NCBI RefSeq assembly: GCF_018350175.1
Contig: NC_058384.1
Coordinates: 69,006,001-69,070,000, forward strand
Direction of reading: 5' to 3'
Origin: Felis catus
Taxonomy: Eukaryota
DNA: 64,000 nt
Below are positions 1 through 64,000 of this stretch, one piece after another. The stretch's first letter is position 1. The number at the start of each line of letters is the position of its first letter. A program made the position numbers and the translations under genes. Under the pieces are notes generated by a model that had not been told where the DNA came from, did not search any database, and saw nothing but the letters and a program-made list of their open reading frames with translations.

Positions 1-362
1 GTAAAGAAATTCGATAAATCAAACCTCAATAGAGAATCTAGTGAATCCTTTAAAGAGGCTTCGTGAGGCCTGCCCTGCACCAGACCTGCTGGCCTGACCT
101 GCCCTGCACAGGAAGAGGACCATGACTGAGTATTGCTAGCAACACAGGTCCCAGGGTCATCCTGGCCTGTCTCCACCCTCAGGGATCCCCCTATCTTGCC
201 CTCCTTTGCCCCTGAGCATGTAGTCAAAGGCCCTCACGAGCCAGGGAACGCTGCAGGCTGGAGAGCACACCCAAGCAGGAGTATAGGGTAGCCAGATGGC
301 TCCTGGAACATCTCCCACAACCAGGTAAAAATGGGGAGATGGTGTCTGGGGAAGGTCAGAAA

Positions 363-1696
363 TCAGACCATATATCCCCATTGTGGCCACTGTGTCTGTG
401 TATAGGGAGGGAGTGGACCCTTAAGAGGTCCCTGGAGCCCAGGGAAATGGAGGCTTGGGCTCCCTTGCTCTTCTCTCGTTGCCTGGAGAACCAGTGGGAT
501 AGGTATTGGGGCTTCACAAGGGGATGGATGGGATAGTCCATGGGAAGAGGAACAGGGATGCAGAGGCCAGGCCCTCATCCCAGGTCCCAGCCTCTCAGGG
601 CCCCACTTACCATGCTGGTCTGGGCTGTGTATTGGCTGGAGCTACCTGATGAGGCTCCAGGAAGCCTGTAAGAGGGGAGGTAGGTGCTGCTGTTTGGGCC
701 TATGGAGGCCGGGGTCCTATGCTCAGCCAGAGCCTCTTGCCTGGAGGCCTGGCTCCTTCTAGGGCATGGGGCCACGGGGAGGGGGCGGCAATGTTGCCAC
801 TGGTTCCAGACCAGGTGTCGTGGGATTGCTGCAGGGGAGGGGAACAGGGAGCCGCCGACGCCCTGCTTTCCCTCAGGTCCTTGCTCAGGCCAACAGACAC
901 CCAGACGTTAGAGGAAAGTGTCGAGGGTGTGAGCTTCTCCCCAGGTTCAGGCCCAGACCGCTCCAGGTACTGCACAAACCCAACAGCCCTGATGGCCTCC
1001 CAGCCCCCACCCTTGCTCCCTCTAACCCATCTGCATCTCCCACCAGCGTTGTGTAAACCACCCCACAATTTACACGGCTCCCCACCACCCCAAGCTCTTT
1101 GGCGACAGACTGTGGGCTACCTGATCGTATCAGCGGTGTCTCCCAACCCACCTCGGAGGTCCGCTGTACACTCATTCCCCAGCATGCACAACACTTTGAG
1201 GCCTCTGTTTGTATTTGTTGTTCCCTACACTTGGCATGTTCTTCCCCCTCCTGTCCCAAGGCCCTTCTAACAAATCACGTTTTGGTGTCCGCTTGGTGAG
1301 CCCTTGGTAGACAGGTGGCTGAAGGAGGAGCTGGGCGGTATCTCCTTGTCCTTCTCTACCCTGGACACTCACCTGGGACTGAGGGTTGCAGAAGTGGGAA
1401 CAGGGCTGAGGAGATGCTGGGAACCAGGGTGAGCAGCAAGGGGGCCTAGAGGGCCCAAGCCCAGTAGAGGAGTTCCTTTTGCCCACTGCTGGGAATGAAC
1501 TCCTTCATGAGGTGGGAGGACAGCTACAGAGGGTCCGCGAAGACCCTCAAAGTGGCCTCCGGCACCAGGACGCCTCAGGGTTCCCTGACCACCAGGTCGG
1601 GCTGTGACATTTTCACAGTAAAGGTTCGCACAGATGCTGGTCTTAGCTCACTGCACTGCAGGCTGGGCAAGTGCAAGAGATGGGTGTAGAGGACAT
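363..1696 (-). CDS. Putative uncharacterised spliced ORF, 97 aa (coding exons 1696-1652, 1445-1373, 828-741, 665-611, 395-363; non-coding exon 1 ending at 1959)
   Basis: Five pyrimidine-tract AG acceptors and GT donors (one GC donor) on the minus strand. One reading frame stays open across all junctions and stops in the last exon. No recognised homology. Confidence 0.4.
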
Positions 1697-2032
1697 GGGG
1701 CAGGTCCTGACAGCCACCTGTGGGCAAGAGGAGCAGAGTCAGCAGAGTGGTGGGGTTGAAAGGACCCTGGGAAGGGGGCAGAAGAGGCTGACCTAGACCA
1801 TCTCAGTGGGTTATGGGAGGGTGGGGGGTACACGGGAAGTGGTCCAAAAACACCAGAATGCTTTCCTCAGGGCAAGTTGTAGGTCAACAAAAAAGGCTGG
1901 GGAAAAACCCGAGAAGGGTCAACCAAGGTCGTGTGAAGAGGGTAAGGAACCTACTCACCCTGTAGTTCCCTTTCCTTCTTCACAAAGCTGTCCCGGAGGC
2001 CTTGAGAGGTGCCTGTTGTAACCAGTGGAGAT

Positions 2033-2062
2033 GTTTGCATAAAGTTGCCGCCCACTGCCAAT
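2033..2062 (-). promoter_or_regulatory. Candidate promoter of the putative minus-strand gene: CCAAT box 2058-2062, GC box 2048-2053, TTTATGCAAAC (TATA-, octamer- or C/EBP-like) 2033-2043
   Basis: Motifs clustered 75-100 nt upstream of a strong donor AGG|GTGAGT at 1959/1958. Confidence 0.4.
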
Positions 2063-2212
2063 CAGCACCTCCCTCACAGAGGTCTTGGGAGTCTGGGCTC
2101 CACCTAAGGGGTTACAACTGGCCTTGTGCACATAAAAGTGGTTTCCACCTCTTCCAAGGACAGGTTAGGAATGCCTGTCCAAGCTAAAGACTTCCAGTCT
2201 CACAGTTCATTC

Positions 2213-2218
2213 TTTAAT
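2213..2218 (-). terminator. CHTOP: Candidate distal polyA signal ATTAAA for CHTOP (a proximal non-canonical AACAAA lies at 2787-2792)
   Basis: tttaat on the + strand. I saw no canonical AATAAA on the minus strand in the 3' UTR. Confidence 0.35.
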
Positions 2219-3795
2219 ATAAATATAAAGGGATCATAGTACACTCAGGTACCGTACCAGTTGGATTTTGCAAGCGCGGTTGTATCCTCCAACGCCACTT
2301 GGCTTTCTCATGTCCACACTTCTACAGGACTAAAACCCCTTGCTTTACAACCCAGAAGCTAAGAAGCCCAGGACTCAAGTCCAGGCTGTCTTAACCAAAA
2401 TTTCCTTCCCAGCTTGCCACATGCACAACCTCCCATTTTGGGAGCTAGGCACCTCAATGGCAGCTGGTTTGATAGAACGTTGTTAGGTTCTTCTTTCCCA
2501 AGAGGACAGTCCAGAATATTGCCAAAGAACGTTGTGCTGGAGCTTCCTCTGGGACAAACAGGCTAGTACCCTGGTTAATCATTCTACCATAGGTTTACTC
2601 AGGGGGCAAATTCTTCACTTTCTGCCCCAAAGCCTTATCAGTACCTGCCGCCCCACCCTGATTTTAAGACAACTATGAAGAAAAGGACTCAACTCCACAA
2701 AGGGGCAGGTCAGAATATTGTTATACTGGCCACAGCATTTCAAAGAGTCCAATAATAGTAGTAGGCCTGGCTAGATTTGAGAACAATTTGTTATGACGAA
2801 CCAGAAATACAAGATTCCACGGAGAACTGGAACAGTTGACAGAATATAGTTGAACTTAATTAAACCTTCAAGGGAAATAAAAAAGAGGGTCAAACAAAGC
2901 CACTGAACGGAGAAGCCCAAGATTGGTTTGGGATAAACATAAGGATAACAGCCTTTCAGCGTGGGTACCTTCTGAGGCCTCCCAGAAGGGATCTGCCAGC
3001 ATCCCATCCCCTTTTCTGAAGCATGTGCCAAATCAAATGGCTATTTCCTCTCCATTGCAGGTTTAAGCGAACCCAAAAGTATCTCTTTGGACAGGATACA
3101 AAGAGGAAAGTTTATACATCTAATTCCAGGGTAGAAAGTGCACACACCCGACCCAGCACACTCCTTATATGGTGTCAATGCCCACAGAAGTAACTTCAAT
3201 CAAATCAGAGGCACTACCATGTGTAACCTATGTGGTCCTGCGGCTATGTCGGTGTTCCTAATTAACTACGCTAAAAATATCAATGTAGCAGAATGCATTT
3301 TTGAGCTCCAAATTTTCTCAACACTTTTAAGAGGCTATTAAATGTAGAACAGAATTGTTTCACAGAAACCTAGGCATTAAGAAGGAACACTGATGGGCTC
3401 TTACTAGGCCTTTTTCACGGGAACACAGAGATGAAATGTTAGAACGTCAGAGCATAGAGACAGGTGAAGGGAGGCAGAGGAGGAAGAGAGTGTTCTAGCC
3501 ACAAGGCCACCACATTCATGTTCAAAGAGAAGTCAGAGCGATGGGGGTGGAGGAACAACCCAAACACAACCAAACAAAATCCAAGTCAGAGGAAAAAAGG
3601 GTTTCATACAACACAGTATCAAAAAAGTAAAAGGAACACACTAAAATGCACAAACTGGTGGCAAGTTAAGTCCATAGCCTATTGTGATAGGTCCTTCCAG
3701 CATCAATCAGGTGTCTTCTCCATCTGTTATTTCAAGGTTATTTACAGATGTGGTGACTTTTGAACAAGAGTCTCTCACAGGAGGGCGGGCAGGTT

Positions 3796-4001
3796 TCAAT
3801 CATTGGTTTCTGGATCTGTTTGTGCCATATAAGCATCCAACTCGGCATCCAGGTGTCCTTTTGTTTTTGACANNNNNNNNNNNNNNNNNNNNNNNNNNNN
3901 NNNNNNNNNNNNNNNNNNNNNNNNNNNNNNNNNNNNNNNNNNNNNNNNNNNNNNNNNNNNNNNNNNNNNNNNNNNNNNNNNNNNNNNNNNNNNNNNNNNN
4001 N
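3796..4001 (-). CDS. CHTOP: CHTOP last coding exon (exon 6); 5' part lies in N gap 3873-4020
   Basis: Visible 3872-3796 translates to (M)SKTKGHLDAELDAYMAQTDPETND*, the CHTOP C-terminus. The upstream boundary is inferred from the human exon length. Confidence 0.93.
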
Positions 4002-5627
4002 NNNNNNNNNNNNNNNNNNNAGAGAACAGTTACAAGTAGGTTTAATGGGTGCTACAGCAAATGCCCCTTAGAGCAGTGGGGCCTAGCTGAGAAAGGCTGA
4101 AAGGGCAGGGCAAAGAGGAGAAATCTGGAAAAACAGGAAACACATTGGGTAGAAAGCAACACATGGAAAGCACACATAATGAATCCCTGTTTACATGCTC
4201 ATCTCTAAATGCTATTTAAAGACTTTTTATTCTATTGACAAAAGTAAAATAACTGACAAAAGAATCTTAATCTCTCCTAAAACAAAGAAATTATCTAAAG
4301 TTGTGAGGCCCACTAGAAGTTTATTAATTAAAATACATTATAGATAATCCCATTTAGTAAGACAGGGAAGAAGGAACAAGGGCACAGAGAAACGGAGGTG
4401 TAAGGCTAGACAATTTTTAAGGTAAGCCTTATTTGAGAGCTTTCTGGAAAATCAGCTCATCTCTCCTCAAACTTACTAAAACTAATGAGCTGACCCCACA
4501 TCAGGAGACTGAGGAGTTACTATGACATAGGAACAACGTGAGAAGATGGGGAAAAATATTTATGGTAGTCCCAGCCACTTCTATCTCAGATTCTAATTGC
4601 CTTCTAACAATTATGGTTATCTGAGAGGTGGTTTCAATCCACTTAACAAAACATACACAGCTTTCTGAAAAGCTACTTTAGACCCCCCACCCACCCCTGT
4701 GATGTCAGAAACCAGGTCAAGATAATTTGGAAACATGCTATTTCATCCTGAAACCCAAACGAGCTTGTACTTCACTCAGTGAGCCAAACATATAATGGGA
4801 GAGAAGAAACTAAGCCCTTGGCTATCAAATTTCCTTTTCTAACAGTTATTGTCCTTTGGCAACTTCAAGGTCATAAATTATGGAAGACCCACCACACACT
4901 ATAAAAGGACCAAAGCCGATATACACAGGGGCTACAGGAATAGATTTGCTCCCACCCTAGACAGGTGTTGTTGAGAGTTTTCCACTAAGCTCTGTATCAG
5001 AAAACTCCCATGAGGTCTGGATTAACAACAGCAACACCATTAAATGCCTTTCCAATCTGGGTCATGATGAGGTCACAAGACAAGTAGCACTAAGTCTCAA
5101 AGGTAAGATTATCAACAAGAGTCAGTTAACTGACATGGTACCTTCTTGCTTTCTACCTTGATCAAAAAAGTCATCTGATTTCCCACAGACACAAACTTTA
5201 CCTTGAATTTACTTGGCTTCAACATCAATACCCAGCTCCAATCTCACCATCCTTTTCCACTCTTTCATTTGTGTACATCTCCCTCTTCTTTATTCTTATC
5301 TTGGACTCAAAGTGGGGTTTTGAGCTATGGGATGGGGTGTGTGGTGGTGGGGCAAGGACAGAGAAAGGTAAAACCTCAAACTGACCATCTTGTCATTTTA
5401 ACGATACAATTTAAATTTGCAAGAACCTGGAAAAAGACTGCATATGATCTGGCTCTGACATGTACCTGACTGGTTCTTAGACAACCCATGACAGACTTTT
5501 GCACTACCGCATGTGAATTTAGAAAGTAAGCCAGTTTCAAAAAACAAAACAAGACAAACAAATAAGCCTGCCTATGACTTGAAGCTGTGCAGAAAGGTGG
5601 CTCTGAGTTTTGAAGGGAGAGAAGTAA

Positions 5628-61414: not shown

Positions 61415-62859
61415 CCAGGCGGGGAAAGCCAGCCACCCCGGGGGCCGGTCGCCTGCGGCTGCAGAGCTGGGAGGAGGGGAAGCCTGGACCCAGCATCTCA
61501 GGCTGGGACGGGCAGAGTCACTGCCAGGGACGTGACCAAGGCCCGGCGGTGCCCGCTGCCCGGTTGTGACCGGCTTCTCTGCCTTCAGGGCTACGGGGAG
61601 GATGTGGACCGGGGTTGGACCCTGGGGCCGTTCTATTCAACCCTCCTGTTCTGCTGACTGGGAGGGAGTTGCTCAGGTCACACTGTGCGTTAGTGCAAAT
61701 TAATGTCCCGGCTCAGGAATACAGCCACTTGCTGGGCCCCATCCCGGCCTGGCCTCCTGCTTAGGGACAGGTGTCTGGGTGCTGACCCTGGCTGTGAGCT
61801 GCTCTCCGCTCTCACATCCCCTCACAGTCCCTCTGTTTCTGTGGCTCTCTGACCTTCTCTCCCAACTTCCGAGTCCCTGTCCCTGCCGCTGGGGGAGCGT
61901 GCTCAGCTGCCTCCCCAGGGGTTTGTGGCTGTTTTCTAGCCCAGTGTCTCTGTGCCACTCCTGGGATCTGGAGAAGTTTTGATTTGGTAGCAGAACCAAT
62001 GGTGTGATGTTGGGAGGTGAGATCGCCCCTTGGCTCCTAAATACTATCCCAGTGGGGGGCTCCCCAGTGCCCCCCATGGCTTTGAGTAACCACAAGCACT
62101 GGTTGGGTGTGGGTGAGACCCTTTGTTCCTGCAGGAACGGGTAAGACCCAGTCCCTGCCCAGTGAGCTCACCATGTGGGGGTGAGGGCAAGAGAAGACAA
62201 GCCCTCAAGTGATTCAACTGGGGCAGATTGTCTAGTGCGCAAGGACAAAAGGAGCCCGTGTGTGGGACAGCAGGTAGATGTGGAGTCTGGCTGGGCCTGG
62301 GAACCCTCCATGGAGTAGGTGGCATCTAACCAGACTTTGAGAGAGCGTTGGGGTTTTGGCAGGAGGACAGGTGGGGAGCAGGGGTGAGCAGAAGCGATGG
62401 GTCTCAGCGCACCGGGGGGACGATGGGCAGGCAGTTAGGGTGTGTGCAGAGGAGGCTGGAAAGCAGGGTGGGGGGCGGAGTCCACTCACGTCACTGCCAG
62501 GCTTGGCGGAGAAGGCGTGGGCACACTGCCACGTCTGAGCCCCATGTGAGCGGGTCCGGAGTGAAAATGGACAAAGTGCTTTGAAAGACAGTGGGCCTTA
62601 CCCTTGGGGTGAGAGACTTTATTTCAGGCTTTATGTGACATAGGGTTTGACAGGGAGGAGCAGTAGCATGAGGGGTCCAAGTGCCTTGGACAGGAGGGGA
62701 CACTGGGTGGCTGTGCAAATATGTGGGTTCCAAGGCCTGGCTTCACCTGCACGGTTCAGGCTTCCCCAAGTCCCATGGTGACCCCTGGAAGAAAGCAGCC
62801 TGGTTTCCCTCTGATCCCGTCAGCCCTTGGCCCCAGCTCCTCTGCGCTGTCTACCTCAA

Positions 62860-63320
62860 AGCTCCCAGGGTGGGCCCCGCGCAGGGTTTCCTCCCAGGCT
62901 GGGTAGGGGTTTCCGCTGCCCTGGCCTCCAGGGAGTAGGCTGGTGTCGCTGAGTCACTGCCTGGGCATCTGGGCCTGGAAGGGTGGGTGAGTCACCTAGG
63001 ACGCGGGGGGGGGGGGGGGGGGGGAGGGGGGAGGGGCGCTGGGGGAGGGGAAGAGGCTTCGGGACGTCTGGAGGACGGAGGGGAGATGGGCAGGCAGGAA
63101 GGGCGGTGCCCACACGGGTGGGGGGAGAGGGGGAGCTTGGGAGGGGGCAGCAAGAAGCCAGCTCTTCCCGGAGAGCCCCTCCCCTGGGCTGGGTCCCGAA
63201 CGCCCCCGCGGCGTGTTTGCCTCTCTCTGGGCAAGGGGAGGAGTCTGCAGGGATGGGGTGTGGGAGGGCGGAGGCCCGCCCGCGGCCCCTTCTCACTCAC
63301 CCACCCTCGGAGCTGGAGAA
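62860..63320. promoter_or_regulatory. GC/CpG-rich element with AP-1 pair (62950-62956, 62988-62994) and long G-run
   Basis: Motifs and base composition. Confidence 0.45.
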
Positions 63321-63581
63321 GGGCGCCAAGATTTCCCTTCTCCCTTCCAAACCTGCAGGGGCTTCCTTACTGTGCACACGGGCTACTGGTGTCCCTCCCT
63401 GCCTTCCTGCCTCCTTCCAGGCGCCTCCCTACCCAAAGGGGGCCTGTCAAGGTGTTTTCAGGCACATGCTTCCCCTCATTACCTTACCAAGGAGAATTGT
63501 GCTGCCAGCTCTGAAGCTTCCCTGACCCGCCCCAGTCAGCTCGAACACACGCGCGTGTGCACACATGCGTGCTCACACACT

Positions 63582-63582
63582 C

Positions 63583-63619
<37 letters not shown>
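63582..63619. repeat. (AC)n microsatellite in S100A2 promoter
   Basis: Direct read. Confidence 0.95.
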
Positions 63620-63623
<4 letters not shown>

Positions 63624-63649
63624 TCTGGGAAGTCCCTGGGTGCCTGTAG

Positions 63650-64000
63650 CCTGACTCACACATGAGCTGTGACTCAAAGGCTTGTGTCCTAAGAGCAAGG
63701 CTGGCATGAGTCTCTAGGCCCACAAACAGGGGCTATCTCCCCTCACCCTGGGTCCTGGCTGCCCCTTCCCCATGGTGCCTCCCAGCCCCTCTGTGGCCTA
63801 GAAGGGGCCTTCTCTTCTGGCTGGCAGGCTGGGTTGGAGCTAGCAGTCTCTGGGAGGGAGGGGGCCAGTAGGGAGTGGGTGGGGGTGGCAGGAGGCCAGG
63901 CTTTGGCGGGATCAGGTTAGGGCAGGCTGGGGGCCAGTGGGGCAGGATATAAACCCCACTGTACGCACCTGGCCCTTGGCTTTCCTTCCAGAACCTCTCT
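63650..64000 (+). promoter_or_regulatory. S100A2: S100A2 proximal promoter, TATAAA at 63948-63953; exon 1 begins near the window end
   Basis: Sequence ...gggaggg...ggcaggaggccaggctttggcgggatcaggttagggcagg...gggggccagtgggg...tataaa resembles the human S100A2 upstream region as recalled. Synteny also places S100A2 next after S100A16. No coding sequence in the window. Confidence 0.75.

What the first reader, a model, noticed from the sequence alone, without database searches (positions are those of the whole stretch)
363..2062. Unrecognised compact six-exon gene immediately downstream of CHTOP
Seen: in 1.7 kb the minus strand carries a chain of strong splice sites. E1 ends at 1959 (AGG|GTGAGT). 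E2 is 1717-1652 (branch ctgac, ctcctcttgcccacag| ... GCA|GTGAGC). E3 is 1445-1373 (gggccctctag| ... CAG|GTGAGT). E4 is 828-741 (cccctcccctgcag| ... CAG|GCAAGA, a GC donor). E5 is 665-611 (ctcccctcttacag| ... ATG|GTAAGT). E6 starts at 395 (ctccctccctatacacag|). The ATG at 1696 gives MSSTPISCTCPACSAAPLLLTLVPSISSALFPLLQPSVPAIPRHLVWNQWQHCRPLPVAPCPRRSQASRLPGASSGSSSQYTAQTSMTQWPQWGYMV* (97 aa), with the stop in the last exon and an in-frame stop upstream in E1. The 75-nt E4-E5 intron is itself in frame and stop-free, so retaining it gives a 122-aa isoform. A CCAAT box, GC box and TATA-like motif sit just upstream of E1. Established: I recall no protein-coding gene between CHTOP and SNAPIN in human. 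Inference: a lineage-restricted or unannotated small gene (CxCxxC motif then a hydrophobic stretch, possibly secreted or testis-expressed), or a spliced lncRNA. An open frame of this length in GC-rich DNA can arise by chance, and the Kozak context is weak.
Basis: partly seen in the sequence, partly recalled or inferred. Interest (0 to 1): 0.8.

Follow-up and report, generated by a model that had tools for sequence, protein, structure and literature searches.

The report
Non-coding transcribed tail downstream of CHTOP
The splice-like motifs and the 97-codon frame are really there, but the frame looks like a chance product, and the stretch is best read as a non-coding, partly spliced RNA tail running on from the CHTOP gene, not a new protein gene.

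Summary

The minus-strand splice-site chain is more than composition gives. No dinucleotide shuffle out of 300 reaches its score, and only segments lying within the window's S100 gene cluster score as high.

The open frame is not unusual:
- 5.7% of shuffled spliced mRNAs carry a frame of 97 aa or more.
- The opposite strand holds an unspliced 183-aa ORF.
- Two related species, about 96.5% identical, break the model. In one the ATG is GTG in three runs; in the other the E3 acceptor AG is AA.
- pN/pS cannot be told from neutral.
- No relatives or domains turned up.

One public contig proves a canonical minus-strand splice. It runs from the predicted E5 donor (611) to an acceptor 110 nt beyond the window edge, not to E6. 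That acceptor opens a short exon carrying the only AATAAA after the CHTOP stop. The same contig keeps introns 2-4.

Best reading: CHTOP read-through or long-3'-end RNA, or an unannotated lncRNA. Read-level RNA evidence could not be obtained because read laying was lost to a filter.

The parts
1959..2062 (-).
   Evidence: Sequence read. The donor scores 6.05, the 99.6th percentile of GT in the window. GGGCGG and TTTATG read GGGCAG and TTTTTG in both related species. CpG observed/expected is 0.19, so this is not a CpG island. The motifs lie about 140 nt downstream of the CHTOP proximal poly(A) hexamer. No RNA evidence for a start here.
1652..1717 (-).
   Evidence: The acceptor scores 6.25 and the donor only 0.4, the 88th percentile. 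The ATG is GTG in species C, in three independent runs (L017, L018, L020). All public contigs that cross it keep the flanking introns.
1373..1445 (-).
   Evidence: The donor CAG|GTGAGT scores 8.54 and is the best in the window. The acceptor is weak at 1.75, and its AG is AA in species B (L014).
741..828 (-).
   Evidence: The acceptor scores 5.4. The donor is CAG|GCAAGA. No junction was seen. However, the contigs I could fetch were selected through an ORF that needs intron 3, E4 and part of intron 4, so they cannot show this splice.
611..665 (-).
   Evidence: Contig L009 (Logan SRR19348665_191984) joins window 611 directly to window -110. The intron is a canonical GT..AG of 720 nt. The acceptor scores 8.48 and the donor 6.5.
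1..610 (-). Window part of the intron actually removed in L009 (610 to -109).
   Evidence: The E6 acceptor is weak at 3.29. Cat lacks 4 nt in its pyrimidine tract that the two related species have.
2213..2218 (-). CHTOP proximal poly(A) hexamer ATTAAA
   Evidence: This is the only ATTAAA or AATAAA on the minus strand between the CHTOP stop codon and window 0. It reads GTTAAA in both related species.
3796..3798 (-). CHTOP stop codon (C-terminus ...AQTDPETND*)
   Evidence: Six-frame word match and translation.
719..1270 (+). 183-aa ATG ORF on the opposite strand. It is a chance ORF, used here as a control and as a handle to fetch public contigs
   Evidence: It has no credible Pfam match.

Best explanation
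The stretch is not a protein gene. It is the transcribed, mostly unspliced minus-strand tail that follows CHTOP's weak proximal poly(A) site near window 2195.

RNA polymerase II runs on for about 2.35 kb to the first canonical AAUAAA, at window -147..-152, just outside the window. There a short terminal exon, from -110 to about -170, is defined by a 3' splice site together with the poly(A) signal.

The other strong splice sites in the tail may be used at times. The 97-aa frame is an accident of GC-rich sequence.

Shown: the motifs, one canonical junction (611 to -110), retention of introns 2-4 in the same contig, and the position and conservation of the AATAAA. Inferred: that the RNA starts at the CHTOP promoter rather than at a promoter of its own, and that it has no coding function.
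For: 1; contig L009 carries window 1747..611 unbroken, then jumps to -110. The intron has GT..AG ends. The two sides share only 1 nt, so this cannot be a graph chimera. The reference genome holds a single copy of the region, so it is not a retrocopy.

2. L009 stops exactly 30 shared bases past the junction. For a k=31 assembly graph (k is from my own knowledge of Logan), that is what is expected if spliced and unspliced forms coexist in the run.

3; between the CHTOP stop (3796) and window -3000 the minus strand has one ATTAAA (2218) and one AATAAA (-147). The AATAAA is followed by a GT-rich element.

4; the ATTAAA is cat-only, reading GTTAAA in two related species. The AATAAA, the acceptor AG and the terminal exon are kept in all three.

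5; 20 runs from 10 studies hold 100% of the sampled 31-mers of 363-2062, introns included. Their contig totals are 92-509 million letters, far below the 2.4-Gb genome. The tool only guesses that they are RNA.

6. Coding is unsupported:
- ATG becomes GTG in species C and the E3 acceptor is lost in species B.
- Exons are 96.2-97.0% identical against 96.6-96.8% for introns.
- pN/pS is 0.51-0.77 on 4 synonymous and 6-9 nonsynonymous changes, and control frames give 0.55-3.4.
- The word search found nothing and Pfam found nothing.
- The exhaustive search gave only a 14-fold tandem-repeat protein at 29% identity, about 26 bits per repeat, and one weak hit at E=1.5e-5.

7. Gene lists for cattle (PMC13624523) and human (PMC5477265) name nothing between SNAPIN and CHTOP.
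Against: - No read-level RNA data could be laid. The junction therefore rests on one contig from one run, and that the run is RNA is inferred from the junction itself.
- Continuity of RNA from the CHTOP last exon across the proximal site is not shown. Contigs L013 and L015 cross it but may be DNA.
- The splice-site chain is stronger than shuffles allow (0 of 300). It matches only segments inside the window's S100 gene cluster, on the sense strand. That fits a dedicated spliced transcript better than plain read-through.
- Cat has CCAAT, GC-box and octamer-like motifs at a sensible distance upstream of the first donor.
Confidence: 0.5

Rival explanations
1. An independent, unannotated spliced long non-coding RNA with its own CpG-poor promoter near 2060. 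It uses several of the reader's exons and ends at the AATAAA exon at -110..-170.
For: - The splice chain scores 50.7. No shuffle out of 300 reaches it, the plus strand of the same DNA gives 26.9, and only segments in the S100 gene cluster score alike.
- Strong donors cluster here, whereas the 1.6-kb CHTOP 3'UTR upstream has none above 3.2.
- CCAAT, GC and octamer-like motifs sit 70-100 nt upstream of the first donor.
- One junction uses a predicted donor.
Against: - The GC box and TATA-like motif are absent from two related species.
- There is no CpG island.
- The putative start lies only about 140 nt past a poly(A) site of a highly expressed gene.
- Every contig crossing E2-E3 keeps that intron, and none ends at the positions a branch at those junctions would give.
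- Splice-site windows differ at 1 of 240 positions from the relatives, but decoy splice-like motifs outside the chain are just as conserved (3 of 332). There is therefore no specific constraint.
Confidence: 0.22
2. A real, lineage-restricted protein-coding micro-gene that encodes the 97-aa (or 122-aa) product.
For: - The frame is open across five predicted junctions and stays free of stops and frameshifts in the two relatives.
- pN/pS is nominally below 1, at 0.51-0.77.
- Only 5.65% of shuffles give a frame this long.
Against: - The start codon is GTG in species C, in three runs, and the E3 acceptor is destroyed in species B.
- The only junction seen replaces E6, ending the frame two codons after the junction.
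- The Kozak context is weak: C at -3 and T at +4.
- No relatives among 5.8 billion clustered proteins by word search, nor among 1.84 billion representatives by exhaustive search, and no Pfam family.
- Four of the seven amino-acid changes in species B fall in E5.
- pN/pS rests on about 10 changes, and one control frame gives the same value.
- A longer ORF of 183 aa lies on the other strand by chance.
Confidence: 0.03
3. Nothing biological beyond noise. The motif chain is a chance cluster picked out of a very large scan, and the single junction is a rare cryptic splice of intergenic run-on RNA or an assembly oddity.
For: - The finding was selected from about 75 such segments per window and many windows, so a local P below 1/300 is not decisive.
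- Nine of the ten cat contigs that cross 611 are colinear there.
- There is no specific conservation of the sites.
Against: - The junction has exact GT..AG ends at a top-0.4% donor and lands on an exon with AATAAA 37 nt inside it.
- A chimera would need a shared 30-mer, and none exists.
- Logan contigs need a k-mer to be seen at least twice (my own knowledge).
Confidence: 0.15

Closest known systems
Distal alternative-polyadenylation isoforms and downstream-of-gene (read-through) transcripts of mammalian genes, including 3'UTR introns
   Same: - It is on the same strand as a highly expressed gene and directly downstream of it.
- The proximal hexamer is weak or non-canonical, and the first canonical AATAAA lies 2.35 kb on.
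- The RNA is mostly unspliced.
- A terminal intron is removed next to the poly(A) signal.
   Different: Physical continuity with CHTOP exons is not shown here. The density of near-consensus donors and acceptors is higher than shuffles of the same sequence give.
Spliced intergenic long non-coding RNAs
   Same: - Canonical splicing and a poly(A) signal.
- No coding constraint.
- A CpG-poor upstream region.
- No named gene at this place in the cattle or human gene lists.
   Different: No transcription start was shown, and the promoter-like motifs are not shared by two close relatives.
Young or de novo small-ORF (microprotein) genes
   Same: A short Pro/Ser/Leu-rich frame with no relatives, next to conserved genes.
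   Different: The start codon and one splice site are not kept among species that are 96.5% identical. The only observed junction removes the predicted C-terminus. There is no translation evidence.

Membership tests
Protein-coding gene (small ORF) | An mRNA exists that joins the exons so that the frame is intact | tested here: inconclusive
   Only E5's donor is seen in use, and it joins to -110, not to E6. The contigs I could reach were selected through an ORF that requires intron 3, E4 and part of intron 4, so they cannot show E3-E4 or E4-E5 splicing.
Protein-coding gene (small ORF) | Start codon and splice sites kept in close relatives | tested here: not met
   ATG is GTG in species C (L017, L018, L020). 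The E3 acceptor AG is AA in species B (L014).
Protein-coding gene (small ORF) | Purifying selection on the frame (dN/dS below 1; exons better conserved than introns) | tested here: inconclusive
   pN/pS is 0.51-0.77 on 10-13 changes, and control frames give 0.55-3.4. Exons are 96.2-97.0% identical against 96.6-96.8% for introns.
Protein-coding gene (small ORF) | Relatives or a known domain | tested here: not met
   No homologue and no Pfam family. The two hits of the exhaustive search are a repeat-driven artefact and one weak hit.
Spliced polyadenylated non-coding RNA | At least one canonical splice junction in transcript-derived sequence | tested here: met
   L009 shows 611|-110 with GT..AG ends. 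This is one contig from one run.
Spliced polyadenylated non-coding RNA | Poly(A) signal at the 3' end | tested here: met
   AATAAA at -147..-152 with a GT-rich downstream element, kept in three species. The cleavage site itself was not observed.
Spliced polyadenylated non-coding RNA | Own transcription start | not testable with these tools
   Only sequence motifs are available, and two of the three are cat-only. No 5'-end data.
CHTOP read-through / long 3'-end isoform | RNA continuous from the CHTOP last exon across the proximal poly(A) site | not testable with these tools
   Contigs L013 (2315..-229) and L015 (527..2509) cross the site, but their molecule type is unknown.
CHTOP read-through / long 3'-end isoform | Weak proximal and strong distal poly(A) signal on the same strand | tested here: met
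   ATTAAA in cat and GTTAAA in two relatives at 2218. The only AATAAA is at -147.

The most novel reading that the evidence does not exclude
A very young, cat-lineage de novo gene. Substitutions seen only in the cat among the three species (GGGCAG to GGGCGG, TTTTTG to TTTATG) would have created a promoter downstream of CHTOP that drives a spliced mRNA. Its 97-aa Cys/Pro-rich product would be translated in some tissue such as testis.
Probability: 0.03. Interest if true: 0.55.

Novelty: new member of a known kind. Interest (0 to 1): 0.15.

Why it matters
If the reading holds, the practical gain is small. The cat annotation would gain a non-coding 3' extension or lncRNA downstream of CHTOP, and a false protein-gene call would be avoided.

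One point has modest wider interest. If the RNA is continuous with CHTOP, the 611/-110 intron lies far downstream of the CHTOP stop codon, and such an isoform would be expected to undergo nonsense-mediated decay. This is an inference from established knowledge of exon-junction complexes.

Tried and rejected
1. **Read laying.** No read-level evidence could therefore be had.

2. **Rfam on 1-4000.** Only a sub-threshold mir-1275 match: 24.9 bits against a gathering score of 71, E=0.05.

3. **Exact-protein look-ups** of five other ATG ORFs. These were window 1813-1962 (+), 366-578 (-), 3023-3190 (+), 2774-3007 (-) and -911..-561 (+). None is on record.

4. **Word search with the E2-region open stretch.** It found only P0001, from a low-coverage colinear contig (L013, coverage 1.9, probably DNA) that carries a SNP removing a stop.

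5. **Splice-site conservation.** The claimed sites differ at 1 of 240 positions against 3.5% overall (P about 0.01 against random windows). Decoy splice-like motifs are equally conserved (3 of 332), so I reject this as evidence of constraint.

6. **Unaligned tails of contigs L005 and L008.** They looked like junctions but are Illumina adapter.

7. **Exhaustive protein search.** P0008 (E=4.8e-9) is a 14-fold tandem repeat matched at 29% identity and about 26 bits per unit, so I reject it as a relative. P0009 matched only weakly (E=1.5e-5, 38% identity over about 36 residues).

8. **Human lncRNA AL162258.** It lies at hg38 chr1:153,631,437-153,632,095. From my recollection of the human map, that is the S100A1/CHTOP-promoter side, not between CHTOP and SNAPIN.

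9. **The spliced 97-aa string.** I did not send it to any tool because it has no reference. The contiguous E4-intron-E5 piece was used instead.

10. **Masked stretch.** Contigs L017 and L018 extend 131 nt into the part that reads N in the window (3873-4020). I did not read or use those letters.

Full report
**Where the stretch lies**

The window is G000:C42:69006001-69070000 of a 2.43-Gb, 71-contig assembly. CHTOP lies on the minus strand. Its N-terminal words are at about 11385, its C-terminus ...AQTDPETND* ends at 3796, and a 1.6-kb 3'UTR runs to an ATTAAA at 2218-2213. S100A1 and three further S100 genes follow at 15-35 kb.

I fetched the DNA below the window. It shows SNAPIN on the same strand, with exon 1 coding at about window -5300, and ILF2 beyond it. 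The finding therefore sits on the CHTOP strand, starts about 140 nt past the CHTOP proximal poly(A) hexamer, and lies about 5 kb upstream of SNAPIN. Gene lists for cattle (PMC13624523) and human (PMC5477265) name nothing between SNAPIN and CHTOP.

**The observation**

This covers the five donors, the five acceptors, the ATG at 1696, the 97-aa spliced frame, the in-frame upstream stop, the 122-aa intron-retaining variant, and the ATTGG / GGGCGG / TTTATGCAAAC motifs at 2062-2033.

**Is it more than chance?**

I ranked sites with a simple splice-site weight matrix written from memory, so it is good only for relative ranking inside this window.
- The donors after 1959, 1373 and 611 are in the top 0.5% of all GT.
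- The acceptors at 665 and 1717 are in the top 1%.
- The donor after 1652 and the acceptors at 1445 and 395 are mediocre.

The chain sums to 50.7. The best possible five-intron chain in 121 control segments of 1.7 kb has a median of 25 and a 95th percentile of 45. The only segments that match it lie in the S100 gene cluster, on the strand of its S100 domain hits. The same DNA read on the plus strand gives 26.9. None of 300 dinucleotide-preserving shuffles reaches 50.7; the maximum is 49.0. So the splice-site chain is not a by-product of composition, although the finding was picked from a very large scan.

The open frame is different. 5.65% of shuffles of the spliced mRNA hold an ATG frame of 97 aa or more. 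The 2.3 kb holds 16 unspliced ORFs of 60-183 aa in all frames, including a 183-aa ATG ORF on the opposite strand.

**Transcript evidence**

The look-up of sequencing runs listed 20 runs from 10 studies that hold all sampled 31-mers of 363-2062, introns included. Their type is only guessed as RNA. I worked beside that place and sent none of its letters to a search tool.

As a substitute I used the 183-aa plus-strand ORF as a handle. Exact look-ups returned public contigs that carry it or a close variant. Eleven cat contigs came back (L005-L013, L015, L016).

Ten of the eleven are colinear with the genome. The eleventh is L009 (Logan SRR19348665_191984). It runs unbroken from window 1747 down to 611 and then continues at window -110. 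On the minus strand this is ...CCAGCATG|AGCTGCTAAAACC..., with gt at 610-609 and ag at -108/-109.

Three points argue that the junction is real:
- The two sides share one base only, so a graph chimera is excluded.
- The reference holds the region once, so a retrocopy is excluded.
- The contig stops exactly 30 shared bases beyond the junction. A k=31 graph gives that when spliced and unspliced forms coexist (k is from my own knowledge of Logan).

With this junction the frame ends two codons later. The new exon carries AATAAA 37 nt inside it (-147..-152), followed by a GT-rich element. This is the only AATAAA on the minus strand between the CHTOP stop and window -3000.

There is a selection caveat. 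Any contig that carries the handle ORF must contain intron 3, E4 and part of intron 4, so these contigs cannot show the E3-E4 or E4-E5 splices. They could show E2-E3 or E1-E2, and none does.

**Comparison with relatives**

The same route gave contigs from two other species.
- Species B: L014 (SRR25058269), 96.8% identical, covering window -282..2945.
- Species C: L017-L020 (four SRR22936xxx runs), 96.4% identical, covering -475..3872.
- The two are 96.0% identical to each other.

What changes and what is kept:
- In species C the ATG is GTG, in three independent runs.
- In species B the E3 acceptor AG is AA.
- The GC box and the TATA-like motif are cat-only, reading GGGCAG and TTTTTG in both relatives.
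- The CHTOP ATTAAA is also cat-only, reading GTTAAA in both.
- The 611 donor, the -110 acceptor, the terminal exon and its AATAAA are kept in all three.

Measures of constraint:
- Exons are 96.2-97.0% identical, introns 96.6-96.8%, and the CHTOP 3'UTR 95.3-97.5%.
- pN/pS of the 97 codons is 0.51-0.77 on 4 synonymous and 6-9 nonsynonymous changes. Control frames give 0.55-3.4, so this says nothing either way.
- The ten splice-site windows differ at only 1 of 240 positions, against 3.5% overall. Decoy splice-like motifs outside the chain are equally conserved (3 of 332), so this is a property of such CpG-free motifs and not specific constraint.

**Relatives of the peptide**

- The contiguous E4-intron-E5 piece (72 aa) found nothing in the 5.8-billion word search.
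- The 110-aa open stretch in the same frame found nothing credible in the exhaustive 1.84-billion search. One hit is a 14-fold tandem-repeat protein at 29% identity and about 26 bits per unit. The other is a weak hit at E=1.5e-5.
- Pfam is blank.
- Rfam gives only a sub-threshold mir-1275 match.

**Reading**

The stretch is transcribed on the minus strand and holds at least one real intron. It ends in a short AATAAA-bearing exon just outside the window. The 97-aa frame has none of the marks of a gene.

I think it most likely (0.5) that this is the run-on or long-3'-end form of CHTOP RNA. A weak proximal site lets polymerase through, and the first strong poly(A) signal, together with the -110 acceptor, defines a terminal exon that is spliced to the nearest strong donor. 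An independent lncRNA with its own start near 2060 is the main rival (0.22). The unusual strength of the whole splice chain speaks for it. The cat-only promoter motifs and the retained introns speak against it. A coding micro-gene gets 0.03 and pure noise 0.15.

What is shown: the motifs, the single junction, the signals and their conservation. What is inferred: where the RNA starts, how abundant it is, and whether it does anything.

**Novelty and score**

An unannotated non-coding 3' extension or lncRNA is an ordinary kind of thing, and the proposed new protein gene is not supported. Interest is 0.15.

Noticed in passing
window 1717-1747 (contig L009 upper end): L009 begins at 1747, exactly 30 nt upstream of 1717. 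In a k=31 graph this is where a branch would start if sequences agree down to 1718 and differ from 1717 onwards. A splice donor at 1718, a variant at that base, or a coverage end would all fit.
   Followed up: partly
window 2213-2218 and L014/L017 counterparts: The CHTOP proximal poly(A) hexamer ATTAAA is specific to the cat among the three species, reading GTTAAA in both relatives. A variant AATGAA a few bases downstream is shared by all three. The CHTOP 3' end in these animals may rest on a non-canonical signal.
   Followed up: partly
L005 end (window 1959) and L008 end (window 1852): Two public metagenome-assembly contigs end in Illumina adapter sequence (AGATCGGAAGAGC...), so adapter was not trimmed before assembly. 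The L005 fragment ends at 1959, one base from the E1 donor cut. This may be coincidence.
   Followed up: partly
window 315-386 (+): Weak match to the mir-1275 precursor family: 24.9 bits against a gathering score of 71, E=0.05. It lies on the strand opposite to the finding and is most likely chance.
   Followed up: no
window 719-1270 (+): A 183-aa ATG ORF with no credible Pfam match is called as a gene on at least 12 public contigs and forms its own protein cluster. This is an example of chance ORFs in GC-rich mammalian DNA entering protein collections.
   Followed up: yes
window 62301-64000 (-): This segment has the fourth-best splice-chain score in the window (49.6). I did not work out what gene, if any, lies there.
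   Followed up: no
window -911..-558 (L001:589-942, +): A 117-aa ATG ORF only 0.4 kb beyond the AATAAA exon is on no public contig, while the 183-aa ORF 1.5 kb away is on at least 12. This would fit contigs that come from RNA and stop at the poly(A) site. A common SNP or different gene calling could also explain it.
   Followed up: partly
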